Of a stretch of 64,000 bases of DNA, positions 6,440 to 30,639 are shown piece by piece. Within the stretch, counting starts at the first letter, position 1. Every line of letters begins with the position of its first letter. Source of the stretch: Ylistrum balloti (Eukaryota); contig NW_026782132.1 in assembly GCF_031769215.1 (NCBI RefSeq), positions 496,001-560,000 of the forward strand, given 5' to 3'. The notes beneath the pieces are model-generated. The model saw only the letters and a program-made list of their open reading frames with translations. It did not search any database and had not been told where the DNA came from. The position numbers were made by a program, and so were the translations under genes.

Positions 6440-9400
6440 GTGAATTGGACTTTCATAATCTACACTATGTATGTGAAGGTAATAATATTGACCGAAACTC
6501 AATGATATCCGACGTATGATTATACAAAATCTTATCTTCAATATAAATATTAAAAGTGTATAACATAAATAAGATGTTTATGGGTCTTTTTACAAGATAT
6601 CGTATGTATTTCATACATAATTACAGATTTGAGATATGTTAGGAACTTTTCCACAGAAAAATGAAAAATTATCCCAAAAAGGAAATAAATTTGAAGTAAT
6701 CCAAAGAACATTGTTTTTGTGAACAAAGAACATAATGTTACTTGTTAACATGAAATTGACCAGTAAAGAAAAAAGAGGTCCAATGGGCCTAAATGGTCAT
6801 CTAACTATAAAGACCAATATATGAAAGAGGGCAAATAAGCTTATTGCTCAACTACTCTACACCTTACAAAGAAGAAATTGTTGGTTCATAAAAACATTTC
6901 CTGCAAACTTGAAATCCTATTCCTTGAGCATGATAGTACACAAATGCCATGACTCCGGACCTATTTCTTGATGAAAAGGAAATTTAAAGATCTCAACTCA
7001 TTCGACCAAAGATACCTTAAATAAATATGGTAGCCCTTCATCCAATCATCCAATGTGAGCTTCAAAAAAGAACAAGGTCAATCACATTAACAAAATTGGT
7101 AACCGTTCCTCCCAGCATGCTACAGGCCAAAAATCAGCAACTTTTATTGTCATTTAAAACATAGTCTATTTGTACATGTACCCAGACTGTAGCGTGTGAA
7201 GTTTTAAACAACTACACCAAACTCACTGTATATGATACTTGTTATCACATTATTGTTGTGCGAACTCTCAAACAGTTTCACACATTACCAATAAGGTCAT
7301 TTTGTTTCTTTTGAGGACTCGGGGCCTTGAATGAATCGTTCAAAAGCTTCACCAATAACTTTCAGGTAAGTCTATGTTTGCTTTCGGGACACTCCAATTT
7401 CATTCGATGAAAAATATAATCTCGGGATTATTGCAGTTATCATATTACGTGTTCATCTCTGCTTGCTAGTAAACACGTTTGAAACATGCGATAAAAATGC
7501 TTAAACCATTAAAAAGTAATACTGTCCGCAAGGTTTTTTGTTTTCTATTATATGTGGTTTTTATTTACCATAGTTTATCATTCAAAGATACTGTATTGGT
7601 ATAGATAAGAATGTCTATTACACAGGAAACACGACAGAACTTTGTCGAATTGAAGTTACACGTCTATAAATGGATCTCGTCTAAGGATTTCCCCAGTACC
7701 CTTTGATTCCTTCAGCAATGTTAATAACAGACACGGCTATTAAGTAGTCAGTTTATAAAACAATTTTGATGTATTTCAATTTACTACATCATTCATTGTT
7801 ATTATTACTTCTTTTTCACACAAGTTAACACAAATGCAAACTCTGTATTGGGCTAATGTAATATTTAAATATAAACACATCCATATATGGTGATAAATGT
7901 GAACATGTTCCTATGTATAGCTCATGAGATTACGTCTGTTCTTCTTTTCTCCGTTAATCCCTCCCAAAAAATGTCAGTGACATAAACAGTTATTTTAAGC
8001 TCAGACGAGAACAATCAGCTGTATTGTATTTTTTGTTGATGTTTATCGTTGACATGCGAATTAATACATACAACAAATGCTGATATAAATTGTTACTATA
8101 AATAGTCTAGGGAATATCCTTATTTTGTTTATAGTGTAGTGTACTGTAGTGTNNNNNNNNNNNNNNNNNNNNNNNNNNNNNNNNNNNNNNNNNNNNNNNN
8201 NNNNNNNNNNNNNNNNNNNNNNNNNNNNNNNNNNNNNNNNNNNNNNNNNNNNNNNNNNNNNNNNNNNNNNNNNNNNNNNNNNNNNNNNNNNNNNNNNNNN
8301 NNNNNNNNNNNNNNNNNNNNNNNNNNNNNNNNNATCCCAATATTCTGTCAAAGGACTTGCTGAAGAATTACACGAAGTATATCAAACACAGAAGAAGGTA
8401 CACTTTGTATGTCAACATATCTATTTCCCGATTCCCTACCGAAAAGTATTCGAGGATTCAGCATGCATCCTTAACAGGGAACAAGTAATTATATGATTTG
8501 TATATAAAACAGGTATACTTCCGCTATATTGTCTTTTTCTTTTCAGTATTTAATGTCCTTGTCACATTTTAAATGAAAATATTAATTATCAGGTAACTAG
8601 CATTATACTGGTGATAATCAGGTAACGGTGGCTAACTGATAGACGACAGGGGTTAAACCAGGTAACGATGGCTAACTGATAGACGACAGGGGTTAAACCA
8701 GGTAACGGTGGTTAACTAAAAGACGATAGAGGTTAAACCAGGAAACAGTGGCTAACTAATAGACGACAGATAGTTAACCAGGTAACGGTGATTAACTAAT
8801 AGACGACAGATATTAAACCAGGTAATATTGGTTAACTAATAGACGACAGATAGTTAACCAGGAAACAGTGGCTAACTAATAGACGACAGAGATTAAACCA
8901 GGTAACGGTGGTTAACTAATAGACGACAGGGGTTAAACCAGATAACGATGGCTAACTAATAGACGACAGATAGTTAACCAGGTAACGTCGGCTAACTGAT
9001 AGACGACAGATAGTTAACCAGGTAACGGTGGTTAACTTAAACCAGGTAACGGCGGCTAACTGATAGACGACAGAGGTTAAACCATAGACGACAGAGGTTA
9101 AACCAGATAACGGTGGTTAACTAATAGACGACAGATAGTTAACCAGGTAACGGTGGTTAACTAATAGACGACAGATAGTTAACCAGGTAACGGTGGCTAA
9201 CTAATAGACGACAGATAGTTAACCAGGTAACGGTGGCTAACTAATAGACGACAGGGGTTAATCCAGGTAACGGTGGCTAACTAATAGTCGACAGAGATTA
9301 AACCAGGTAACGGTGGTTAACTAATAGACGACAGGGGTTAAACCAGGTAACGGTGGTTAACTAATAGACGACAGGGGTTAAACCAGGTAACGGTGGCTAA

Positions 9401-10984: not shown

Positions 10985-11031
10985 TTTTCCCGCGGGAAAA
11001 TGTCCATGTGTCTACGTCACGTATGACGTCA
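10985..11031. promoter_or_regulatory. Proximal promoter of F-BAR/SH3 gene: palindromic double E2F-type site and CRE
   Basis: Perfect 16-bp palindrome TTTTCCCGCGGGAAAA (10985-11000); ACGTCA-cgta-TGACGTCA (11014-11031) ending 17 nt before the ATG. Confidence 0.55.
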
Positions 11032-11047
11032 TTGTCATACAATAACA

Positions 11048-11133
11048 ATGGCGGAACAGGGACAAAAGGAAATTTCTTTTGAGCTCTTTTATCCGAAAAA
11101 TAGAAGTGGCGGGAACTCGTATGAACACAAACA
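11048..11133 (+). CDS. F-BAR/SH3 gene exon 1 (MAEQGQKEISFELFYPKNRSGGNSYEHK)
   Basis: acaATGG start context, donor CA|GTAAGA, phase 2 compatible with the exon at 12547, directly downstream of E2F/CRE motifs. Confidence 0.65.
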
Positions 11134-12206
11134 GTAAGACTGCTATTTCATTATTCCCGAAAACATGTTATGATTCACTGATCGTGTGAACACTTATACT
11201 TTTAGATAATGTACTACGAATTTACTTTGCAACCATACTACAGTCTGAATCAGTATGTTTACAACGCAGGGACCTAATGGACACGTACGTTGGTAGAAGG
11301 ATGCGTGTTACCTATTGTTGCTGGGGGCCACTGTCTGAAGCATCGAAGGTCTCAGTTGTGGCACTGTTGATGTTTTTTTTTTTTTTTATCAGGTCTGCAG
11401 TAGATGTTATCTACATGTATCAATGACACACCCGTTATGTAACCTGACTCTTGTCTCGAACAGAAACTATACAAAGTGAACCATATTGTAATCCTGTTAA
11501 ACCACTAGTCGCAATAACACTCAGATGAAGAGAATCTTCTTTGTTAATCTTAAAACTGGCGAGTCATATTTTCCGGGTTCGAATCTTAGAGAAGATCTTG
11601 AATTCAGAATCAACTATTAGGCTAACATTATACAGATCAAGTCAAGTCAAATATCTTATTAACATCTCGCCATTAAATAAATCTTTACACCAAAATGAAA
11701 ATAAATATTGATTCATTAAAAGTATATACCGCCACTCTGAAAATATTTATTAGATATGTTTAAATAATAATTATACGTAAAATATTTTGCTCCTCTTGGC
11801 AACTGCAAACCAAGTGTACTATCTATATGATAAACTTCGTCTTTGTAAAATATATATAAAAAAAACACGGTTTTACAAATTACATTGCTCTTAGATAAGA
11901 CATTATCATATAAAATTAGTACTAACGTATCAGTATCACTAAAATTCGGGAAATTGTGACATATTTCATTTGCATTTTTAATTATTTCTTGTCATTGTGT
12001 AAATCACGTTTTAATAAACCGTGCTCATCACCTTGAAACATTTTTCTGTTTATTCTATTTATCTGTGATTGCCACTCACGTACTAATTACAAATTGTACT
12101 TGTCAAAACTTGCCTCATTAACAGTGCCTGTAAGAAGTTTTGAAGAAACTCTTCAGAATTACTTACAAACTGATCCAACCCATAATCACCACACCCATTT
12201 TACTTT

Positions 12207-12243
<37 letters not shown>

Positions 12244-15200
12244 AACCAATCATTCCAACACAAAACATTCTTTTATTCAACAAGACTTTCTTCATAATAA
12301 TCAATAAATGAAATTGTCTTATATCACTTTCCAATTGTGTAATGCAAATAGGGGTCCATACCTCCAATTACTACCGCTTTAGACGCAGAACGACCTACAC
12401 ATAAAGAGAAACGACATGTTCGATTTGAATGGCTGGATACTGCCATAGGCAATCAAATAAATTATGTTAAGATGTTTTCAACTTTATATCTTATCAAGAT
12501 TGGTACACTGTGACGTAATCGATAAAATGGTGTTTTTTTTGTCTAGTCTTACCGACTTCGAGTTCTGGAGAAAAATCGCTGATGATAAAGCACATATTGA
12601 GGACCAGTTTGCCAGGAAAATGTATGCATGGACCGCTTCTGTCCGCAAGGAGCTTTCCAGTTTACAAACTCACAAAGGTACAATATTTCGAAAATTGACT
12701 ATTAAGTACTAAATATAGCATTGCAATCATATTCCTCAAAAAGGCAACTAAAAATTCGAATTTAAGTAGATGTGTTTCAAATCATTTTCTACCTGGTAAA
12801 ATATCGTTCAGTCTCTTAATGTTAAGAAGTATATGTTGCTTTCAATATTAACTAAAACTATAGATTCACACCTGACCAAGTCTCTAGAGATGGAATTGGG
12901 ATTCTCCAACCTAAGGGCTGACCAGGCGGAACGGAATTCGATAGCCTTCACTCGGCTGGCACGCCACCTAGAAAGGTACGGAGGTACTTCTCCTTACGTT
13001 CGTTTTTAAGTACACGTCAAGTTGATCTCGGACAGGTAATTATATTTTTTCTTATTATACATTTTGAAAAATGTCGGATGAAATGGTTTGCTGTATACTG
13101 TAAGTATTAATGAAGAATATTGTGAGATAAAAGATAAGAAAACAATATTTCAATATAATCTCGATATTATGTATTTGTCGAACATTCAGATTTACCCATA
13201 TTTTCATGGGTTTCTTTATTGAGTTTCAGGGCTGGGAGGACCAGGTCTGTTGTTTAAAGGTTGCTACAAACCCAGACTTACTTCTATATATCCGAGATAT
13301 ATATAGTAAAGTGTGCTGTGAGGAAGAGTATACCTTTCACAAGGAGGATAGACATTTCTCTACCCACACTACGAACCCCTCTCACTATGAGAAAGGATAG
13401 ATATTTATCCACCCCACTACGCCCCCTCTCACTAGGAGAAAGGATAGACATTTCACTATCCCCACTACGCCCCCTCTCACTAGGAGAAAGGATAGACATT
13501 TCTCCATCCCCACTACGTCCCCCTCTCACTATGAGAAAGGATAGATATTTATCCACCCCACTACGCCCCCTCTCACAAGGAGAAAGGATAGACATTTCTC
13601 CATCCCCACTACGCCCCCTCTCACAAGGAGAAAGGATAGACATTTCTCCATCCCCACTACGACCCCTCTCACCAGGAGAAAGTGTAGAATTTCTCCATTC
13701 ACTACATCCCTCTCGCTAGGAGAAAGACACAGATATATCCAATCCCACTACGATCCCCCCTCTCACGAGGAGAAAGGAGACATTTCTCTCTCACAAGGAG
13801 AAAGGATAGACATTTCTCTATCCCACTACGACCCCTCTCACCAGGAGAAAGTGTAGAATTTCTCCATTCACTACACGGCACAGAGATATATCCAATCCCC
13901 CTTTCACGAAGAGGGAGATTGGACGTCTCTCCACCACCACTACGTCCGCCTCTCACGAAGAGGGAGATTGGAGATCTCTCCACCACCACTACGTCCCCCT
14001 CTCACGAAGAGGGAGATTGGACATCTCTCCACCACCACTACGTCCCCCATTCAATTGATTCTGAAGATTGAATTGGATCAAAACTTTATGACCAGTCGGA
14101 TGATGGGATTTGTATTGAAAATGGGTTTACAATAAGCGCTGCAATTTCTACAATTGGTGAATATAGAGTATATTTTAGGGTCCGCTAGATAACTACGAGT
14201 CTTGTTTTTTTTCTAAACACAGAAACAGCCGAGGTTGTATCTGAAACGTTTTTATTGTACTCCAGTATAGAACACAGTTTTGCTATATCCCAGTATATTT
14301 ACTTAAAACTGCTGTGACTGTGTCCGACGAGTACACGGATATATACCTCAAGTATTTACACAGAAACGGCATATGCTGTATCTTTTTAATGCTGTTCTTT
14401 TAAACCTCAATATATGAACAGAAATAGTTGATGCTGTATCTGAAGAGTACCTCATTATATTATATCTCGGTATATTTACAGGGAAACAGTCGGTGATGTA
14501 TCTGACGAGTACACGGGCCGTATGATGACCTATCGACACCTGTTGAGAACACTGAGCAAAGTCTCTGCCACCTGTCAGCAGCTTCAGCAAGTTGGTATCT
14601 TCATTTGTTCTTTTGCTTGCGTGTCTTGGTCTCAATTTTTTCTCACATTTTAGCAAAGCTCCTAACTTGTTTTCCTTAAATTTCTAAATTTTCGAAAAAT
14701 ATCGGAGTCTGTTGACATAACTCTTGACGGATCAACGGAATTGTGAATGAAACGTGAGAATGTCGGAAGTTTGTAGAATTGGGTATCATGGCGATTATAT
14801 TTAAGATTCCCGTGTCTGTGTCAGCATTTAGTTTACATTAGTTTTTTTTATTATAGAAGCTCGTGAGGAAACGATCGAAGTTGAGGGAACATCTGATGGC
14901 CATAGCCAGGATGGACGAAAGCAGACAGGAAGTGGCGCCAGAACTACATGGTAACATGAAGGAGATCCGTAGAAGTGTGGATACAGCAACTAGTAAATGT
15001 CGCCAGGCCCAGCAAAAACAGGCTTCTGTTGTAGAGGAGGCGAAACAGGTTTGATTTTCCGCACAAAAAATAATATGAAAACAAACATCTACATCATGTA
15101 AGGCAGCGTTTTACTTGATTACATTATCATAAGGCTTTTCGTCCGTAAGGATACGGTTGGTCATGATATATATAAAAAAAAATATATTTTTTTAAAACAC

Positions 15201-18200
15201 ACAAACTCGTCTGTGTACTTGTACTGTTTTCGCTGTCTCTTTTCGAATTCGACTTTGCCATATTGTTACTATCAATGATGGTTTTCTTTGCAAAGAGACT
15301 AATGGTTTTTTCAGCAATCACAAAAGCTAAGGGCTTCATGGATTCACAAAGAAATCCGACGGTCGGAGTTCCTTGTCCAAGAGTGGCTACAATGCCTCAC
15401 AGAAAAGATGACGTCACTAGACACCGACGATAGAGAGTACGTCCGGTTTGTCTGAATTGCCACCAAATTTTTAATAAAGAACACTTTCAACTGCGGCTCT
15501 AACACTGCACAAATCAATGAAATGGTCTTTTGTGTAATTGAGACTTACATTCTTTGATTATATTCTAAATTCGTAGTCTTTGTTGTAAGCACATGTATTT
15601 ACAATATATTCAAAGAGTTAATTTAGTAATTTGCATCGTGACATTATCTAAATATGCTAATTACTTCATGTGCACTTGTCGTGTTGGCAGTAGAAGGTTC
15701 TGTCCCTGTTCAAAATTTTAGAGATTACACTCCTATTATATTGTATAATATCTTTGATGTCATTGGAAAGTCTTGGAAAATCTGGACTTTGAAAAGTCAA
15801 AGTGCTTCACTCAACAATGACTGGAATGTTTGTATGCTGAAATAGCTATTAATGACATTATCGGTTGCTAGGACAATCCCAATTCCACACACTGATATTA
15901 ACAAATTCTTATTGTTCTGAAAAGCTATGGCTTTGACGAGATATATTCTTTTGAGCGACTGGTGGTTTAGTAGAGTGCAATGGTGCTGTCGAACACTGAG
16001 GTATAAGGAATTAAAATTTCAACGGATCAAAATATACCTTTGCACGCTTGAATTTTCCGTTTTAGGTATGAGTGCAAAGCGCTAAAGCTGTCCGATTCTG
16101 TATCCGTGCCGGAAATGGTTGAACGGTTGGCAGAGAACAGGAAGAAGCAGTTCACCATCAAGGTAACGACACTGCTTGTATTGGTATAACTATCAGGATT
16201 CTTGTTCTGTTTCCAAGCTACATTATTGATGTTTCAGAAAATCATGAAATAGTGATATGTTTTCACTAGAAACATTTGTTAAAAACATATTTAGTGTCTA
16301 TAGACGTACGCTTGGATTGTTGAAAGTGTGACCAAGTTGTTGAACTGATTCTGTGATCAACAAAATTCCTTATAAAAGTATCGCAGTATCATGTCTTATG
16401 TGAAATAGACCACAAATTGATTATATCTATCAGACGTCACCAGTATTGTGGATTCGATATTGTTTTTTATCACAGGAAGAGTCACCTTGTTAATGCTAGT
16501 TCATTATGAGAGAAAAAGCCCCCATCTGTTTTAGTTCATGATAAGAGGGAGTGGCTCCCTGGAAGTGCTAGTTCATGATGAGAGGTAGGGGCTCCCTCTC
16601 AATGTTAGATCATGATGAGAGGTAGGGGCTCCCTCTCAATGTTAGATCATGATGTGAGGTAGGGGCTCCCTCTCAATGTTAGATCATGATGAGAGGGAGT
16701 GGCTCTCTCTCAATGTTAGTTCACGATGAGAGGGAGGGGCTCCCTCTCAATGTTAATACATGATGAGAGGGTGTGGCTCCCTATCGATGTTAATACATGA
16801 TGAGAGGGAGGGGCCCCCTGTAAGTGCTAGTTCATGATGAGAGGTAGGGGCTCCCTCTCAATGTTAGATCATGATGAGAGGTAGGGGCTCCCTCTCAATG
16901 TTAGATCATGATGAGAGGGAGTGGCTCTCTCTCAATGTTAGTTCACGATGAGAGGGAGGAGCTCCCTCTCAATGTTAATACATGATGAGAGGGTGTGGCT
17001 CCCTATCGATGTTAATACATGATGAGAGGGAGGGGCCCCCTGTAAGTGCTAGTTCATGATATAAGAGGGAGTGGCTCTCTCTCAATGTTAGTTCACGATA
17101 AGAGGGAGGGGCTCCCTCTCAATGTTAATACATGATGAGAGGGTGTGACTCCCTATTAATGTTAATACATGATGAGAGGGAGGGGCTCCCTGTAAGTGCT
17201 AGTTCATGATATAAGAAGGTGGCTCCCTGTCAATGTTAGTTTATGATGAAAGGGAGGGGCTCCCTCTCAATGTTAGTTCACGATGAGAGGGAGTGGATCC
17301 CTCTCAATGTTAGTTCACGATGAGAGGGAGCGGCTCCCTATCACTGTTAGTTCATAATGAGAGGAAGGGGCTCCCTGTCAGTGTTAGTCCATGCTATAAG
17401 AGGGTGGCTCCCTGGCAATGTTAGTTTATGATGAGAGGGTGTGGCTCATACTCAATGTTAGTTCAAAATGAGAGAGAGCGGCTCCCTTTCAATGCCAGTT
17501 CATGATTTAAGGGTATGGCTTCCTGTCAATGTTAGTTAATGGTGTAGAGAGCAGCTTCCTGTAAATGCTCGTTCATGATTTGAGGGAGACGCTCCATGAG
17601 GTGCTAGTTCAAGATGTCAGGAAGAGGCACCCCGTCATTGCTAGTTCATGATGTGAGGGAGAGGCTTCTTGTCAATACTAGTTCACGGTGTGACAGAGCG
17701 GCTCCCTTTCAATGCTAGTTCGTGGAGCCATGATGCAAAGGAGCGGCTTCTCGTCACTGCTAAACCATGATGCGAGGGAGCGGCTGCGTTAAGTGCTAGT
17801 TCATGATTTGAGCGATATTTTCCAGGAGATGGATATGGAAACTGACATGAGCTTATCTCCGCCCTTATCACCTGTCGTCGTTTCTACCCGAAATAACACC
17901 CTACTGTCCGATGTAGAAACGGACCTTGTGGTACGACTTGACAATACGTCAGAGGATGAGTCACTCGGAGAGGCACGTTTGGATAGAAGGAAAGTGAAAC
18001 TAGAGATCAATTACCATAAGCCTCCAACTTATGAAGGTATGACATTTATTGCAAAATTAAATCCTGGTGGTGTATTGCTTTAAATTCAACATCTACATGT
18101 ATTCCTTTTGAATTTTCTTTGTGCTCGGTTTAACAAAGGGTCTGCACGTCTTTTTGTTGTTATTGTTGATGTTATTACGACTATGTGGGTTGTTTCTCTT

Positions 18201-19596
18201 GTTGTTATCCAGTCATTGCTCCTGTTATTTTTCAGTCGGTACGATTTGTTTTCTCCTGTTATGATTGCCTAGTCGTTGCTTCAGTTTTTTTTTCAGTCTT
18301 TACGGGTTGCTTTCTCCAGTTGTTTTCCAGTCAATACTCTAGTTATTACCCAGTCATTATTGTTGTTTCTCAGTCTTTACGGGTTGCTTTCTCCAGTTGT
18401 TATGCAGTCATTGCTCCTGTTGTTTCACAGGCCTTACGGCATGTGTTTTTATTTGTCTTTTTTTAAACATGTTTTATTGTCTCTTTTGCAGGAGTCACCA
18501 GTCTTATCTGTGAATCTTCCTCCATAGAGAAGATCGATTGTGATGAGGATAGAAGAATTGTTCGAAGTAGCGGAACATCAATGAAAACGTTTCTTCCTGG
18601 GGATGAATTCGATGTCGCTTTGATGGGAGAGGGGGACTCTGGTAAGTTGTATGTATTTGTAGGAAAGAAAGCGTGAATCGAAAGCAATATGAAAGCATTT
18701 TGGTTGTGCCAGTAAGAAGAGGAATTTATATACTCGTCGGTTGTTTAAATATATACTGTCCATAAAATCATACATTGTCTGTAATCAGCATTTTGTGGAC
18801 GTTCGCAAACATCGCCTTGCTTGAAATAATCCGTCGTAAAAAGAGCATTATGGAATAAACTGTTACAGGAATTAAGTTAATGTTACAGGGGAATGGTCTG
18901 AAGTTTAACAATTTGGAGTGTAAAAGGCAATAATTTTACTTTACTGGTAAAGAGGTAGACTTGCTACAAGTCCCAAAATTTAAAAGAAGTTCTAAATCAG
19001 GGGCGTTATATTAAACTCTTACTTCGTCTTTCTTAATGAAAGATTCTGGAGACAAGGCTCAATATTTATGAGATGTCTTGCCTCTGTTGCAAAATCATGG
19101 GACAACCCAGGAAAACAAAGCATAGTGGTACAGATGCCTTTTATGGACATATCCTCTTGGTTTCTTATTATCGCCTTTTATGGATATGTCCTTTTGGTTA
19201 TTCATTGTTACCGTTTATGACCATACTCATAATTATCTTTTATTTTCTTATTGAGTACAGGAGTACAGCCAAAGAAGGTTCCTATTCTCTGTTTGGATGA
19301 AGGCAATTCTTATCACGTGGTTGTAACGAAGGATTATCGGAAAAAGTCTGCTCGGGACATCACTATAAGACGTGGTGAGTAATTAATATATAAAACATAT
19401 TTTGGACTGCTACAGAAAAAACACATTTCCTAATATAGTGATCATTATTGAATACAACCTTACCGTTACAGGCCAGAAGTTAGAGGTGTGTTCCATGGCA
19501 CCAAGGAAGGGGATGCTGTTCGGCTATAAGAAGTGTCGGTTTAGTGGTAAAGAGAAGGGAGGATATTTCCCAGAGGACTGTGTCGTTATCTACTAA
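11048..19596 (+). CDS. 11-exon gene, about 485 aa: divergent F-BAR-like coiled-coil N-terminus, acidic linker and C-terminal atypical SH3 (PACSIN/PSTPIP-like architecture)
   Basis: Exons 11048-11133, 12547-12677, 12864-12975, 14482-14590, 14857-15048, 15315-15445, 16066-16162, 17826-18036, 18492-18641, 19261-19374, 19472-19596. All introns are GT-AG with compatible phases (2,1,2,0,0,2,0,1,1,1); total 1458 nt, no internal stop. F-BAR-like motifs: DDKAHIEDQFARKMYAW (cf. ERAKIEKAYAQQLTDW) and KEIRRSEFLVQEWL. SH3: VVTKDYRKKSARDITIRRGQKLEV...GYFPEDCV. Confidence 0.8.
12209..12241. repeat. (TACT)n microsatellite
   Basis: About 8 tandem TACT units. Confidence 0.9.
12547..12677 (+). CDS. F-BAR/SH3 gene exon 2 (LTDFEFWRKIADDKAHIEDQFARKMYAW...)
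   Basis: Acceptor ttttttttgtctag, donor AAG|GTACAA, F-BAR helix-like motif. Confidence 0.8.
12864..12975 (+). CDS. F-BAR/SH3 gene exon 3
   Basis: Acceptor aaaactatag, donor AAG|GTACGG, open frame phase 1 to 2. Confidence 0.75.
13340..14047. repeat. Minisatellite, about 48-bp unit (GGAGAAAGGATAGACATTTCTCCATCCCCACTACGCCCCCTCTCAC..), in intron 3 of the F-BAR gene
   Basis: Tandem units; 16-codon periodicity in the spurious ORFs 13261-13719 and 13284-13643. Confidence 0.95.
14482..14590 (+). CDS. F-BAR/SH3 gene exon 4
   Basis: Acceptor tatatttacag, donor CAA|GTTGGT, phase 2 to 0; bridges exons 3 and 5 in frame. Confidence 0.7.
14857..15048 (+). CDS. F-BAR/SH3 gene exon 5 (coiled coil)
   Basis: Acceptor tttttttattatag, donor CAG|GTTTGA, 64 codons of helical sequence. 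Confidence 0.8.
15315..15445 (+). CDS. F-BAR/SH3 gene exon 6
   Basis: Acceptor ttttttcag, donor CG|GTTTGT, contains KEIRRSEFLVQEWL. Confidence 0.8.
16066..16162 (+). CDS. F-BAR/SH3 gene exon 7
   Basis: Acceptor ttttccgttttag, donor AAG|GTAACG, phase 2 to 0. Confidence 0.8.
16490..17810. repeat. Minisatellite, 37-bp unit (CAATGTTAGATCATGATGAGAGGTAGGGGCTCCCTCT), about 35 copies, in intron 7
   Basis: Visible period 37; homogeneous core, diverged flanks reaching the exon-8 acceptor. Confidence 0.95.
17826..18036 (+). CDS. F-BAR/SH3 gene exon 8 (acidic linker with LSPPLSP and PPTY)
   Basis: Acceptor attttccag, donor AAG|GTATGA, phase 0 to 1. Confidence 0.8.
18190..18445. repeat. Degenerate pyrimidine-rich tandem repeat, about 55-57 bp, in intron 8
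   Basis: Recurrent cagtcattgctcctgttgtttctcagtctttacgggttgctttctccagttgtt. Confidence 0.8.
18492..18641 (+). CDS. F-BAR/SH3 gene exon 9
   Basis: Acceptor tctcttttgcag, donor CTG|GTAAGT, 150 nt open. Confidence 0.8.
19261..19374 (+). CDS. F-BAR/SH3 gene exon 10 (SH3 first half)
   Basis: Donor GTG|GTGAGT; encodes VVTKDYRKKSARDITIRRG. Confidence 0.85.
19472..19596 (+). CDS. F-BAR/SH3 gene exon 11 (SH3 second half, stop)
   Basis: Acceptor ccgttacag; encodes QKLEVCSMAPRKGMLFG...GYFPEDCVVIY followed by TAA. Confidence 0.85.
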
Positions 19597-24428: not shown

Positions 24429-24948
24429 CGAGCTGTGTGAATGCTTTGATAGCTATCGACATGACTGTACACAGTATACAGACCAGCTCTACACTGAAAG
24501 CTTAGAATTTCTACTAGTGAAAAAGACGAGAAACAAAGATGGATTACAAATGAAACAAGTAAGGAGAATGCTAACGGGATGTAGTGTGTGTGAGTTTGTG
24601 TCTGTGTAGTTTAAGTAGTGACTGTAAACCTATCGACTAGAACACAGGTATACTCGTTCCATAGTACATGTATAACCGGGTATGGCCACAGATCGACGGC
24701 GGTGAACGCGACGAAACAGTGGCTCTGTGTCAACAACAACTGATCGCATTTGGGAACTAAAGTGAAAAAGCAAATGTGGACTAAGCTATGTGAAAACATA
24801 CTACTGTTTCCTTCTGTTACCAAGAAAATGTGAGGATTTTAGATAAATACCTGTCCAGTTATTGATTACAGGTGCGACAATGGTACTCGCGTTATGTCAC
24901 TAACGGAGTACTTGGTTTTGGAGTCACAGGAGTCTCCAGGTTTTAGTG

Positions 24949-27900
24949 ATGGCAAGTATAAAGTATCGTACTAACAATATGCCATCTAGAACTTCACGTT
25001 ACACGTTTCCCCTGCTAGTTTTACTGCAGTTTTTAATAGCTTTTGCCCAGGGCCAGGGGCCTGGATCAACATGTAGTAATGTAGCCAGCGAACAATTCTC
25101 GATTAGGGAGGGTCGTCCCCCTGGAAGCACGGTGGGAACTATTATCACACAACCATCATATACATACTCATTTAAGGAACCCCAGTCACTATTTGAGTTA
25201 CACCCCACATCTGGGGTCATCACCACCACAGCAGAATTGGATCGTGAAGCGTTGACAACAAATCCCATACAAATTTTGGTGATTCGTTCCTTGTCGGGTA
25301 CCACTCAACAATGCCCTACCGAAGTTTTCATAACAGTTGAAGATATCAACGACAACTCACCTGCATTTCCTTCGTCAAGTATTCAAATTACATTCAATGA
25401 AAATGTCAACATCGGGTATCAGGTCCCGTTGACAAGTGCAACCGACATCGATCAAGGCAGCTTTGGAACAATCACCAATTATACCATCATCAACATGACG
25501 GAATCTGCCAACGAAAAATTCATGTTGATTTATGACATTAACCAGTTTGGAGATGTTCCTCTCGTTCGTGCCATTGGTGGATTAGATAGAGAGGATAAGA
25601 ATTTTTATCAACTTTGGATTTCTTGCCAAGATCAAGGTGTTCCCCCACTTTATGGATATTTACAAGTGAACATTAGTATTGCAGACTACAACGACAATGC
25701 ACCTCAATTCTCACCAAGTCAGTACGTTGCCAGTATTAATGAAAGTGTGCCAATTGGAACCTCCGTGATTAAAGTGGAAGCCACTGATAAAGACATCGGT
25801 ATCAATGGAGATATTTCGTACCGATTAACTGATGACACACAGCAGTTTACCATCAATCCTAAAACTGGAGAAATTTCAACAACATCCTCACCATTGAAAT
25901 GTATGCGTCGATGTGACCGTTCAACAATTGACACATGTGAGCCATCTAGTTGTATGCTGACCATTGAGGTGGAAGATGCAGGTCGTCCTCCACTTTCTGG
26001 ACGTGCTTACGTAACCGTCAATGTGAAAGATGAAAACAATAATGTACCGGAAATGAAAGTGACATATTTACCAAGTGGAAGTCTCGGATATTCAACGATA
26101 GACGAAAACGCATCTAATGGTACCAATGTAGCTATTATAAGTGTAAGCGATAGTGACACAGGAAGTTACGGTACTATTTCAGATGTACGTATTGTATCGG
26201 GAAATGATTATAATCATTTCTTCTTACAAAATCGTCTCAATAACAAGCTGGAGTTTTTAAAAGTGAATGGAAACGGTGTACTAGATCGGGAGAGGATTGA
26301 AAAATACAACATAACTATCATGGCAGCTGATGGAGGAACGCCACCAAAAACATCTCTTAAAAGTATTCTGGTTTATATCAAAGATGTGAATGATCATCAT
26401 CCTATGTTTACAAAAACACAGTATAGAATATCACTAAGTGAAACTGTGCCAGTTTCCAGCTATGTAACAAGTCTGACGGCTGTAGACCTTGACACTGGTG
26501 ACAATGCAAAGCTATCTTATGCCATAATTTCTGGAAATGAGTTCAACTGGTTCAAAATAGATGCAAGTTCTGGACTTGTCACCACGCAGGCCTCCCTGAG
26601 GTACGAGGTTCAAACCCAAGTTGTAATGAACGTTTCAGTACATGATGGAAGTTTGAATCCTTTGTATAACTTTACAACATTGATTGTCACAATTTCTGAC
26701 GAAAATGACATAACGCCTACATTTGATCATCATATTTATAATGCATCAATAGCTGAAGGATTACCAACTGGATCAAAAGTGGTTAATGTTACTGCCAGAG
26801 ATGACGACTCTGCACCAAATGGAACTGTGACATATTCGTTACACCAGGATGTAGATGAGAGATACCCAGGAACATTTCAGCTTGACTCCACTTCTGGCGT
26901 TGTTACAACCCTAAAGGTGCTGGACAGGGAGGTCATTGCCTATTATATCATCAGAATCATCGCCCGGGATGGAGGTACACCAGCGCGATCATCCACAGCC
27001 ACCGTCAATGTAAATGTGGATGATATTAATGACAGTATTCCAAGATTTTATCCTATCACATACTTTGCTGAAGTCCTAGAAAACAAACCTGTAGGAACCA
27101 GTGTCGTGAAGGTCTTTGCAGTAGATCCGGACTTTGGCTTAAATGGGACAGTCTATTATTCCTTCAATGGGAATTATCCTCAATTTAGCATAGACCAGAA
27201 CACTGGTCAAATTACAACGGCAGCCATATTGGATCGTGACACCCGTTCAACATACACACTGAGTGTCAAGGCAACAGATGCTAGAGGAAGGACAAATGTA
27301 CAAACTGCTTCAGTGGAAGTCGTCATTACAGACCAGAGTACTACTCCACCTACCTTTAGAAATACAGTATATGATTTCAGCATAGTAGAAGACCCATCTA
27401 ATATGCCTGTAGTCTCTGGCCGCACAGTTGGAACTGTCAAGGCAGACGCAACAAATGTTGGTGTGTCTATTTCCTACAAAATAGTAGATGGGGATCCCAA
27501 CAGTGTCTTCACAATGGATAGTGGGACAGGGAAAATTACCAACAACAAACGTGTCGACAGGGAGGAAAGTGCTCAGTATACCTTACAGGTCATTGCTACA
27601 GCAGGTGGTTTGTTTGGGGAAGCCACAGTTAGAATATCTGTCTCTGATATCAACGACAACACACCCAAGTTCACAAGTTCTGTTGCTGAAGCTGAGGTAG
27701 TGGAGAATTGGCCTGTGGGACATGATGTGTACTTGGCTAAGGCCACAGATGCTGATGATGGTCAGAATGCTGAAATTTCCTACAGACTACAATCAACACC
27801 TGATGTATTCAATATCAACCCAGCAACAGGAATGATCTTCTTGGCAAAACCAATAGACAAGTCGAACGTGAAAAATTTTGTGTTGAATGTTATCGCCTCA

Positions 27901-30153
27901 GACAGTGGATCATCACAGCTATCATCAACAGTACGTGTGGAAATTGAAGTCATCGATGTCAATGATCACACTCCAGTGTTTTCCCATAGCAACTATGAAG
28001 TCTCCTTGAACGAGTCACTGGATGTGAACTCCCAGTTCTTTACTCTGACAGCAACAGATGATGATAGTGGTTTAAATGGTCAGGTCACCTACAACATAAC
28101 ATCTGGCAATGGGGATGGAAAGTTTGGCATCTTTCCAGATGGAAAACTCTTCTTGGCAAGAACATTAGACAGAGAGACAAAAGACCATTACAAACTGACC
28201 GTCACTGCAAAGGATATGAGCATGGAACAGCGAAGTTCCTCAGCAAATGTTTCAATCTATATTCTGGACGATAATGACAAAAGGCCGCTGTTTGACAATG
28301 CTTCCTACTTATTTGATATCTTGGAAAATCAACCAGCTGGATCAGTGGTAGGGATGGTTAAAGCTACAGACCAAGACATTGGGCGCAATGCAGAACTTTC
28401 GTATTATCTGGACCAAACACAAGACAACTTCACCATCGATGCCCAAACGGGCGAGATATCAAGTTTACGGCCCTTTGACAGAGAATATCTAAATGAAACC
28501 ATGGGGAAAACTTCCTATATGTTTTCTGTGTATGTAACAGACAATGGTCTACAGAGGTTGACGGATTCTGTCATGGTGGTTGTTAATGTCCTAGATGTCA
28601 ATGATAATCCTCCAAAATTCAAGGAAAATGTCTACCGAGCGTCTTTATTAGAGGACGCTGCAGAGAACACGCTTGTCCTGAAAATTGGAGCATCTGATAA
28701 TGATACGAATGAAAATGCTGCTTTGTCATACCTTATTGTAGATGGCAATGTGGACAACAGGTTTAAGATCAGTGCTGGGAATGGGCAGATCTATTTAAGT
28801 GGTGGACTGGACCGGGAAAATCAGGAGAGTTACACTCTTACGATAATCGCTAGTGATTCTGGAAAAGACCATCAATACACTGCTACAACAACTGTGTCCA
28901 TTACTGTTCTTGACGTGAATGACAATGCACCTCTCTTCGACCAAACAGCTTTTGACATTGGTATCTTGGAAACAACACAGTTAGGTGAGGAAATAGCCCA
29001 TTTTACAGCCACCGACACAGATTTAGGACAGAATGCACAAATTGTGTACAAGGTTAGTGAGAATGGGGGAACTTTCAACATCGATCGTAACACTGGAAAG
29101 TTGTACTTGGAGAAAGCTCTGGATTATGAGAAAAAATCGCAATATAATTTGAATATATCGGCTGAGGATAAAGGAAAGACGTCTCTATCCCAATATGCAC
29201 GTTTGACTGTGCGAGTTCTGGATGCTAATGACAATGCGCCAGACTTTGGATCAACTCCATCCTATGTGACTGTATCGGAAGCTACTGCTTTGTACACAAA
29301 CATTCTCAAAGTCACTGCGACGGATCCTGATGATGGCATTAACGGCAAAGTTGTATATTCTATCAAGACACAAAACCCACCAGTCGAGCATTTCAAGATT
29401 GATACTTCAAATGGTTACATCTATATTTCATCAATTCTAGACCGAGAGTCAGTACCAACATTTACCCTGAAGGTTGTTGCATCTGACTCAGCTCTACCTT
29501 CCCTAAGTAAATCATCAGAGAAGGAGATCACGGTGTTTATAAGTGACATCAATGACAATGATCCTGAATTCCTGTCGATGAATGCTATTGCATTGCCTTA
29601 TCCAGCAAGTCAAGGGATATTCGGAAAAGTCTTGGCGGTAGATCCTGATAACGGTTCAAATGGTACTGTTGTGTATGAACTTGCACAGGGTGATCTAGAA
29701 AAGTTCAGCCTCCAAGAAACTACAGGGGAACTCTCTCTTCGGAAAAATATAGGCCAAACTCCTGTCACCTACTCACTAAGGGTGATTGCCAGAGACAGCG
29801 GGATACCATCCCCTCGGTCAACACATCTGGATATCACTGTTATTCTGGTTGGCTCATCTGGTGGACCAACATTTCAGAATGTACCATATCATGGACAGAT
29901 ATCAGAAAACAAGCCACCGGGCAGCTACATTCTTACCTTGGAAACTTTACCTACAACGTCTACCACAGAATATTACATTACGGGAATTACTTCAAGTAAA
30001 GAATCAACGGCAAATTATTTTGAAGTGAACATTATTAATGGATCTATTACATCATCAGTTGTGTTAGATCGGGAAACCCATGGAGATAACTTCACGGTAC
30101 AAGTGTGTGCGCTTGAGAAACAGAGCTCCGTTCCAAAGGCATCTCTTACACAG
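24949..30153 (+). CDS. Fat4: Fat4/fat-type giant protocadherin, first coding exon (signal peptide + cadherin repeats EC1-EC16, last repeat interrupted by the intron); gene continues beyond window
   Basis: 5.2-kb stop-free frame with a hydrophobic signal peptide (PLLVLLQFLIAFAQG) and 16 repeats carrying PE, LDRE, AxDxG and DxNDNxPxF motifs. It ends at the strong donor CAG|GTGAGT (30153/30154). Motifs such as YGYLQVNISIADYNDN, GRAYVTVNVKD, SGNEFNWFKID, PRFYPITYF, VVENWPVGH, FGIFPDGKLFL and FLSMNAIAL match what I recall of human FAT4 and fly Fat rather than Dachsous or Fat1. ATG at 24949 (gtgATGG); alternative ATG at 24979. Confidence 0.93.
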
Positions 30154-30639
30154 GTGAGTTTCACAATATTATTTCTTTGTTGGTTTTGCAGCAGATTGTA
30201 CCTGCGAAAAATAGGCTAAACACAGTAATGTTTTCTAGGAAATAGTGACAATTTCCCTGATTTTTTTCTCCATTTTTGGGAAATAACCAACAGTTTTGCC
30301 CAGGAAAATAGTTTGCCTCCAGCTTTAAAAGCAGGTAAAAAGAAGAAAACATTGACCATAGGAACACCTTGATATTAATCTTACATTTTGTCTTGTTCCC
30401 ATGCAATGATGGATAGGACCAAGATAAAAAGAATATTGTATAAAGCTCACTGGAGAGTTATGATAATATGTAATTGTGACTTGTTGGAATTCATACTATC
30501 ATTAATATCCAGAAGATTCTTCAAAAATTAAATTTCAGATTGTATTGTTGAAAAGATATAATTCTCTATCGTCTGAAATTTTGACCTTTCTTCAGGAAGT
30601 AAAACAGTGTTTTGTGATATATTACTAGAAAAATTGTGT

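What the first reader, a model, noticed from the sequence alone, without database searches (positions are those of the whole stretch)
11048..19596. Hidden 11-exon gene: a highly divergent F-BAR + SH3 protein invisible to the ORF track
Seen: eleven short exons splice in frame through canonical sites into about 485 aa. Known: a long helical N-terminus with ERAxIExxYAxxLxxW-like and ExxRxxFLxExL-like motifs plus a terminal SH3 is the PACSIN/PSTPIP/NOSTRIN F-BAR layout. Inference: it is far more diverged than normal syndapin orthologues, with no NPF motifs and a long acidic linker. It may be a lineage-specific, undescribed membrane-shaping paralogue.
Basis: partly seen in the sequence, partly recalled or inferred. 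Interest (0 to 1): 0.7.

Follow-up and report, generated by a model that had tools for sequence, protein, structure and literature searches.

The report
Scallop-only divergent F-BAR-like SH3 gene
This is a real, conserved 11-exon scallop gene, already annotated but unnamed, whose protein probably pairs a very diverged membrane-bending (F-BAR-like) domain with an unusual SH3 domain; relatives were found only in scallops.

Summary
Eleven + strand exons (11048-19596, all introns GT-AG) join in frame into 485 codons. Every exon and split codon matches the RefSeq protein 'uncharacterized protein LOC132550174 [Ylistrum balloti]'. The gene is therefore spliced and annotated, not hidden, but it has no name. 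It is single-copy in this genome. It has collinear orthologues in four other scallop genera and is under strong purifying selection (dN/dS about 0.11). No relative outside Pectinidae was found.

The SH3 reading is well supported, although the domain is atypical. The F-BAR reading is probable but unproven. In favour:
- Protein-language-model neighbours are all FCH families.
- FCH is the top Pfam hit for exon 2, at only E 0.07.
- The N-terminal 250 residues are predicted all-helical.
- A predicted antiparallel homodimer scores 0.64 against a best control of 0.00.
- BAR-superfamily folds lead a structure search made with a weak model.

Against: no profile search reaches significance.

Canonical PACSIN, PSTPIP, NOSTRIN-like, CIP4, FER and srGAP exons lie elsewhere in the genome, so this is an extra, divergent gene. 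Interest is moderate.

The parts
11048..11133 (+). Exon 1 (residues 1-28 plus 2 nt). It carries the start codon. It is an alternative first exon in other scallops.
   Evidence: It is 82% identical to Mizuhopecten P0005. P0001, P0006 and P0008 start differently.
12547..12677 (+). Exon 2 (residues 29-73). It holds the first long helix and the FCH-like motif at residues 42-57.
   Evidence: Pfam FCH E 0.073, 13.8 bits, profile positions 22-48. hhalign places it in the same register, P 0.083. This helix forms the predicted dimer contact.
12864..12975 (+). Exon 3 (residues 73-110), second helix. It is the most constrained exon.
   Evidence: 94% identity and dN/dS 0.018 against Mizuhopecten. Helix 74-113.
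14482..14590 (+). Exon 4 (residues 110-146). It includes the invariant YTGRMMTYR stretch.
14857..15048 (+). Exon 5 (residues 147-210), helical.
   Evidence: This exon found the Mizuhopecten orthologue in the exhaustive search. It is single-copy in the own genome.
15315..15436 (+). Exon 6 (residues 211-251). It holds the EIRRSEFLVQEWL motif in the fourth long helix.
16066..16162 (+). Exon 7 (residues 251-283), the short last helix of the helical domain.
   Evidence: Helix 265-277..
17826..18036 (+). Exon 8 (residues 284-354), acidic disordered linker with the conserved PLSP motif at 296-299.
   Evidence: dN/dS 0.29.
18492..18645 (+). Exon 9 (residues 354-405), linker. An alternative in-frame donor lies at 18641.
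19256..19374 (+). Exon 10 (residues 405-445), end of the linker and first half of the SH3. An alternative in-frame acceptor lies at 19261.
19472..19596 (+). Exon 11 (residues 445-485 plus the stop), second half of the SH3.
   Evidence: 90-95% identical among scallops. dN/dS 0.025. SH3 hits.

Best explanation
The locus is the single-copy Ylistrum balloti gene LOC132550174. It encodes a 485-residue cytoplasmic adaptor found only in scallops.

Shown:
- Eleven exons match the RefSeq protein exactly.
- The gene has collinear orthologues in four other scallop genera, beside the same FAT-like cadherin gene.
- It is under strong purifying selection.

Inferred:
- Residues about 30-283 form four long helices plus a short one. 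These fold as a very diverged F-BAR-type (BAR superfamily) bundle that lacks the first helix and the N-terminal half of the usual second helix.
- Two copies pair antiparallel through the helix that carries the FCH-like motif. The two-fold axis lies near residues 49-51.
- The net-positive later helices (119-244, net +12) would lie on acidic membranes.
- An acidic, Ser/Thr-rich linker (284-420) carries one invariant PLSP site. It leads to a basic SH3 domain (net +9) in which several canonical proline-peptide-binding residues are replaced. This SH3 probably binds a non-standard partner, or folds back on the acidic linker or the helical domain in a PACSIN-like autoinhibition.
- The likely function is membrane-associated scaffolding in trafficking or cortical actin.
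For: Gene reality:
- Every exon and split codon matches P0007.
- Exon-by-exon collinearity with Mizuhopecten, followed by the cadherin gene.
- dN/dS is 0.08 for the helical part, 0.20 for the linker and 0.09 for the SH3.
- Single copy in the own genome.

F-BAR-like domain:
- FCH is the top Pfam hit for exon 2 (E 0.073).
- hhalign gives the same register against this genome's own FCH exons (P 0.083).
- The best named language-model clusters are all FCH families. The top score is 0.90 with 165 shared features. PSTPIP1-like scores 0.89 and FNBP1L 0.88, followed by PACSIN3 and Nostrin.
- Predicted helices are 32-68, 74-113, 119-169, 174-244 and 265-277.
- The homodimer score is 0.64 against a best control of 0.00. 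That mark was reached by 21 of 30 proteins solved as pairs of one chain and by 0 of 23 solved as single chains. The three runs share at least 37% of their contacts and the partner's pLDDT is at least 65.
- 18 of the top 33 VIA-align rows are BAR, I-BAR or F-BAR domains, Z 8.7-11.6.
- Nine F-BAR chains align over 255-292 columns among Foldseek's top 50, at E 0.26-1.4.

SH3:
- Pfam SH3_2 hits 5 of 5 orthologues, best E 6.8e-4.
- All 32 PDB profile hits are SH3 domains, best E 0.018.
- UniProt names the Mizuhopecten copy an SH3 domain-containing protein.
Against: - No FCH hit on any full-length orthologue.
- The family profile finds no F-BAR chain in the PDB at E <= 10.
- The same profile finds nothing in 120 kb around the genome's own PACSIN, PSTPIP, NOSTRIN-like and CIP4 genes (best E 5).
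- Both AlphaFold models are poor (pLDDT 39 and 52), so the fold searches rest on weak geometry. Z values under about 13 are common for any helical bundle.
- Language-model neighbours at 0.90 occur for 4-10 in 100 shuffled proteins.
- The dimer pass may be from the model's memory of solved dimers, and any antiparallel coiled coil could give one.
- FCH profile positions 1-21 have no counterpart.
Confidence: 0.58

Rival explanations
1. The helical part is a generic antiparallel coiled-coil or BAR-like scaffold with no common ancestry with F-BAR domains. The protein would then be a scallop-specific coiled-coil plus SH3 adaptor, and its F-BAR-like motifs would be chance or convergence.
For: All profile tests are non-significant. 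The structure hits include many unrelated helical bundles and ESCRT-III. The atlas shape search gave nothing.
Against: All ten best named language-model clusters are FCH families. The weak FCH hit sits at the expected place and register, and the two motifs are spaced much as I recall them in PACSIN (recalled, not measured here). The layout with a C-terminal SH3 matches PACSIN, PSTPIP and NOSTRIN.
Confidence: 0.3
2. It is the fast-evolved one-to-one orthologue of a described F-BAR-SH3 gene (PACSIN/syndapin, PSTPIP or NOSTRIN) and not an extra gene.
For: It has the same domain order and a similar size. The phase-1 intron right after the first long helix is at nearly the same place and phase as the first intron of the scallop's canonical PACSIN gene.
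Against: Clear canonical FCH exons lie on other contigs of the same genome. I named them PACSIN (C864), PSTPIP (C481), NOSTRIN-like (C190), CIP4/TOCA (C103), FER (C900) and srGAP (C580) by eye from the motif. Within scallops the gene evolves slowly, so it is not a runaway copy now.
Confidence: 0.07
3. It is an annotation artefact or a decaying pseudogene.
For: No transcript data could be examined here. No paper mentions the locus.
Against: All eleven exons are intact with canonical splice sites. Five scallop species keep the same open frame. dN/dS is 0.11 with synonymous sites near saturation.
Confidence: 0.03

Closest known systems
PACSIN / syndapin (F-BAR + linker + one C-terminal SH3)
   Same: It has a similar size and domain order. 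It has an ERAxIE-type motif in the first long helix and an ExxRxxF-type motif in the last long helix. A phase-1 intron follows the first long helix, as in the scallop's own PACSIN gene. An invariant Met-Met pair at 124-125 lies near the numbering of the PACSIN wedge-loop methionine (M126 of pacsin-1, PMC3517540); this is a resemblance only.
   Different: There are no NPF motifs. The FCH region fails Pfam. About 20 residues are missing ahead of the motif. The SH3 is basic and has altered ligand-binding residues. A canonical PACSIN first exon lies elsewhere, at G000:C864.
PSTPIP1 (F-BAR + C-terminal SH3)
   Same: It has the same architecture. It is the second-best named language-model cluster (0.89). 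PSTPIP1 F-BAR chains align over 292 columns at 18% identity in Foldseek, with E about 1.
   Different: The scallop's canonical PSTPIP gene has an intron inside the FCH motif, which this gene lacks. No significant sequence match was found.
NOSTRIN (F-BAR + HR1 + SH3)
   Same: It has about 500 residues, an N-terminal F-BAR and a C-terminal SH3. It appears as a language-model neighbour at 0.80.
   Different: No HR1 signal was found. A NOSTRIN-like FCH exon pair lies at G000:C190, and its FCH motif is split by an intron.

Membership tests
F-BAR / FCH (Pfam PF00611) | The FCH profile is matched above the curated cut-off (27.8 bits). | tested here: not met
   Exon 2 alone scores 13.8 bits, E 0.073, over profile positions 22-48 only. 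No hit on five full-length orthologues.
F-BAR / FCH (Pfam PF00611) | An N-terminal all-helical domain of about 250-300 residues with three long helices. | tested here: met
   Predicted helices are 32-68, 74-113, 119-169, 174-244 and 265-277. This holds for secondary structure only; helix packing is of low confidence.
F-BAR / FCH (Pfam PF00611) | An antiparallel homodimer through the long helices. | tested here: met
   In silico only. The score is 0.64 against a best control of 0.00. The mark was reached by 21 of 30 solved same-chain pairs and 0 of 23 single chains. The runs share at least 37% of contacts and pLDDT is at least 65. The contact is symmetric and centred on residues 49-51. This supports binding but does not show it.
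F-BAR / FCH (Pfam PF00611) | A three-dimensional match to solved F-BAR domains that stands clear of other folds. | tested here: inconclusive
   VIA-align gives FCHO2 Z 9.9, FES 9.5, Syp1 9.2, Cdc15 9.2, Rgd1 9.0 and syndapin 8.7. These sit among other BAR domains and unrelated bundles. Foldseek gives E 0.26-1.4. The models have pLDDT 39-52.
F-BAR / FCH (Pfam PF00611) | Binding and bending of acidic membranes by a basic face. | not testable with these tools
   Only composition is available: the helical domain is net +8, concentrated in helices 119-169 and 174-244.
SH3 domain | An SH3 profile match. | tested here: inconclusive
   Pfam SH3_2 scores 19.7 bits against a 21.8 cut-off, but it hits 5 of 5 orthologues. 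All 32 PDB hits of the C-terminal profile are SH3 domains, best E 0.018 over the whole domain. UniProt names the Mizuhopecten copy an SH3 domain-containing protein.
SH3 domain | The canonical proline-peptide-binding residues: ALYDY tyrosines, WW, and the Pro and Tyr of the 3-10 helix. | tested here: not met
   In the alignment to the FRK SH3, the first aromatic of the ALYDY motif is Lys, the Trp-Trp pair is Met-Leu and the final Tyr is Cys. The DY tyrosine and the FP proline are kept.
PACSIN / syndapin subfamily | NPF motifs in the linker, and being the genome's syndapin orthologue. | tested here: not met
   No NPF in any of five orthologues. A canonical syndapin first exon lies at G000:C864:28589-28741.

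The most novel reading that the evidence does not exclude
Scallops carry a private, slowly evolving subfamily of the BAR superfamily. It would be an N-terminally shortened F-BAR-type dimer joined by an acidic linker to a basic SH3 that has lost the standard proline-peptide pocket. It would have arisen from a syndapin-like ancestor before the pectinid radiation and now have a partner and membrane role unlike any described F-BAR protein.
Probability: 0.35. Interest if true: 0.5.

Novelty: new variant of a known kind. Interest (0 to 1): 0.38.

Why it matters
If the F-BAR reading is right, this is a lineage-restricted remodelling of a module that is otherwise very conserved across eukaryotes. The remodelling has three parts:
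- a shortened first long helix;
- no recognisable FCH signature;
- an SH3 whose charge and pocket are changed.

That would make it a natural test of which features of F-BAR domains are really needed for dimerisation and membrane binding. It also shows that standard domain scans leave such proteins labelled 'uncharacterized' in several mollusc annotations. If the reading is wrong, it is simply one more orphan coiled-coil SH3 adaptor.

Tried and rejected
Sequence and profile searches:
- Pfam on each exon gave only the weak FCH hit on exon 2.
- The protein atlas on exon 2 alone gave nothing useful.
- A profile of the five orthologues against PDB sequences gave no F-BAR; the only helical hit was a chance one at E 0.14.
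- The word-index search with the protein, with the alignment, and restricted to the most conserved block 40-150 returned only the four scallop clusters.
- The exhaustive search with exon 5 found one real cluster; the other three hits were unrelated repeat proteins.
- The own genome searched with the protein and with the profile gave only the locus itself, so there is no detectable paralogue.
- The family HMM against all open frames of 120 kb around four canonical F-BAR genes, and of 40 kb around a weak FCH hit on C235, gave nothing.
- hhalign against this genome's FCH exons gave the right register but only P 0.083.

Structure:
- AlphaFold full-length and N-terminal models were both poor.
- Foldseek on both models gave no hit at E <= 0.001.
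- The atlas shape search was uninformative.

Context:
- Look-up of the encoding contigs failed for P0007, P0001 and P0008 and worked for P0005.
- The bacterial promoter scan is irrelevant here.
- Upstream ORFs gave no Pfam signal.

Exons were searched by reference. Full-length work used database protein P0007, which the exons match exactly. The N run 8153-8333 was left as it is. Nothing in the window looked human.
Full report
**What is there**

The window is a piece of a 648.5 Mb invertebrate assembly (G000:C275:496001-560000). On the + strand between 11048 and 19596, eleven short open stretches are bounded by AG acceptors with pyrimidine tracts and GT donors, and their phases fit. My first model gave 482 codons. 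Each exon was searched by reference.

**Finding the annotated protein**

Pfam on the eleven exon translations gave one relevant hit. FCH (PF00611) was the top family for exon 2, but at only 13.8 bits, E 0.073, over profile positions 22-48 of 78.

Exon 5, run exhaustively against 1.84 billion cluster representatives, found one real relative. This was a 473-residue protein of Mizuhopecten yessoensis, named only 'uncharacterized protein LOC110449683'. Searching with that database protein returned three more clusters, from Argopecten irradians, Pecten maximus and Ylistrum balloti, all 'uncharacterized'.

The Ylistrum protein (P0007, LOC132550174, 485 aa) is 100% identical to the window's exons. 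An exon-by-exon check shows that every whole codon and all seven split codons match. This requires that exon 9 ends at 18645 and exon 10 starts at 19256. That choice adds three residues to my first model and aligns without gaps to the other scallops.

So the window is Ylistrum balloti and the gene is annotated but unnamed. It escapes an ORF track only because it is spliced.

**Is it a working gene?**

- The Mizuhopecten locus (L002) has the same eleven exons in the same order, with no similarity in the introns. It is followed by the same giant FAT4-like cadherin gene as in the window.
- Nei-Gojobori counts were summed exon by exon against Mizuhopecten. They give dN/dS 0.11 overall, 0.08 for the helical exons 2-7, 0.20 for the linker exons 8-9 and 0.09 for the SH3 exons 10-11.
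- Synonymous divergence is about 1.2, close to saturation.
- The gene is single-copy: the protein and the five-sequence profile find only these eleven exons in the whole assembly.

**Range of the family**

The following searches returned nothing outside Pectinidae:
- the word-index search with the protein and with the alignment;
- the word-index search restricted to the most conserved block, residues 40-150;
- the exhaustive exon 5 search.

No paper in the library cites any of the locus names. These searches have limits (the word index; a 64-residue query). The honest claim is 'no detectable relative outside scallops'.

**The C-terminal domain**

- Pfam SH3_2 hits all five orthologues just under its cut-off (best 19.7 bits against 21.8, E 6.8e-4).
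- A profile of the last 71 residues finds 32 PDB sequences at E <= 10. Every one is an SH3 domain, the best being FRK at E 0.018 over the whole domain.
- UniProt already calls the Mizuhopecten copy an SH3 domain-containing protein.

The domain is unusual. In the FRK alignment the first aromatic of the ALYDY motif is Lys, the Trp-Trp pair is Met-Leu and the final Tyr is Cys. The domain has a net charge of +9, whereas, from general knowledge, SH3 domains are usually acidic.

**The N-terminal domain**

Evidence for an F-BAR-type fold:
1. The weak FCH hit lies at the expected place.
2. hhalign of this genome's own canonical FCH exons against the family alignment picks the same register, P 0.083.
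3. In the protein atlas, the best named clusters for residues 28-290 are all FCH families. An F-BAR cluster scores 0.90 with 165 shared features, PSTPIP1-like 0.89 and FNBP1L 0.88, followed by PACSIN3 and Nostrin.
4. AlphaFold predicts helices 32-68, 74-113, 119-169, 174-244 and 265-277.
5. The homodimer test on residues 28-300 scored 0.64 against a best control of 0.00. That mark was reached by 21 of 30 proteins solved as pairs of one chain and by 0 of 23 solved as single chains. The runs share at least 37% of their contacts and the pLDDT is at least 65. The confident contacts are a symmetric antiparallel pairing of the first long helix, centred on residues 49-51, inside the FCH-like motif. 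The tool warns that a pass may come from memory of solved dimers. That would still speak for likeness.
6. An all-against-representatives structure search with the N-terminal model puts 18 BAR, I-BAR or F-BAR domains among the top 33 rows, Z 8.7-11.6.
7. Foldseek's weak rows include nine F-BAR chains aligned over 255-292 columns.

Evidence against:
- There is no FCH hit on any full-length orthologue.
- There is no F-BAR among PDB sequence hits of the profile.
- The family HMM gives nothing against 120 kb around the genome's own PACSIN, PSTPIP, NOSTRIN-like and CIP4 genes (best E 5).
- Both AlphaFold models are poor (pLDDT 39 and 52).
- Z values of this size are common for helical bundles.
- Only about a dozen residues precede the motif in the conserved core (exon 2 onward), and FCH profile positions 1-21 have no counterpart. 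From memory, canonical F-BAR domains have roughly 45 residues there. Exon 1 is swapped for other first exons in some isoforms.

I put F-BAR-type at about 0.58 and a BAR-like dimer of some kind somewhat higher.

**Relation to known genes**

The genome has FCH exons on other contigs. I named them by eye from the motif:
- syndapin/PACSIN on C864;
- srGAP on C580;
- CIP4/TOCA on C103;
- PSTPIP on C481;
- FER on C900;
- NOSTRIN-like on C190.

This gene is therefore an additional one, not the orthologue of those. The PSTPIP and NOSTRIN-like genes split the FCH motif with an intron, and this gene does not. The syndapin gene, like this one, has a phase-1 intron just after the first long helix, with a similar junction. 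That is a hint of syndapin ancestry and no more.

There are no NPF motifs. All orthologues carry one invariant PLSP site, and the linker is acidic (net -13).

**Earlier scan note**

A first-reader note on another piece of this genome reports a tandem triplication of a 'divergent F-BAR-SH3 gene' (s1-244211). My genome-wide searches found no paralogue of the present gene, so that gene is not a close relative. I did not locate or test it.

**Verdict**

The gene is real, conserved, scallop-restricted and undescribed. The SH3 is sound but atypical. F-BAR is the best but unproven reading. Novelty: a new variant of a known kind if the fold is confirmed. Interest is moderate.

Noticed in passing
window 24946-30219 (+), with similarity from about 24366: A single open exon of 1757 codons holds 16 cadherin repeats plus FAT4-type N-terminal cadherin-like domains. 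It is the start of a giant FAT-like cadherin gene. The same neighbour (4981 aa) follows the orthologue in Mizuhopecten.
   Followed up: partly
window 13345-14048 (intron 3) and 16531-17721 (intron 7): Two intronic tandem arrays: 48-49 nt units (about 9 + 3 copies) and a 37 nt unit repeated about 32 times. The units contain GAGAGGGAG...CTCCCTCTC-type inverted halves, and the arrays raise local GC to 0.45.
   Followed up: no
window 18641/18645 and 19256/19261: Two in-frame donor and acceptor pairings are possible for intron 9, giving 482 or 485 residues. The stronger-looking consensus pair (CTG|gtaagt with tacag|G) is not the one in RefSeq. The RefSeq pair matches the length seen in other scallops.
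   Followed up: partly
window 11013-11031: A perfect TGACGTCA palindrome (CRE-like, 11024-11031) and a nearby ACGTCA half-site lie just upstream of the start codon. In Mizuhopecten the annotated gene starts about 27 kb upstream of the first coding exon, so this may not be the promoter.
   Followed up: no
window 12209-12243: A perfect (TTAC) microsatellite of about 9 copies in intron 1.
   Followed up: no
window 8153-8333: A run of 181 N (gap or masked).
   Followed up: no
G000:C864:28589-28741, C580:510146-510322, C103:245044-245172, C481:252743-252826, C900:56270-56461, C190:968541-970098: These are the canonical F-BAR first exons of the scallop. By their motifs they are syndapin, srGAP, CIP4/TOCA, PSTPIP, FER and a NOSTRIN-like gene. 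The hits on C23 (a leucine-rich repeat) and C235 look like noise.
   Followed up: partly
P0001, P0005, P0006, P0008 (other scallops): The orthologues have alternative first coding exons or start sites. The Mizuhopecten RefSeq and GenBank models differ in exon 1. The Argopecten and Pecten X2 isoforms start at or inside exon 2. The conserved core therefore begins with exon 2.
   Followed up: no
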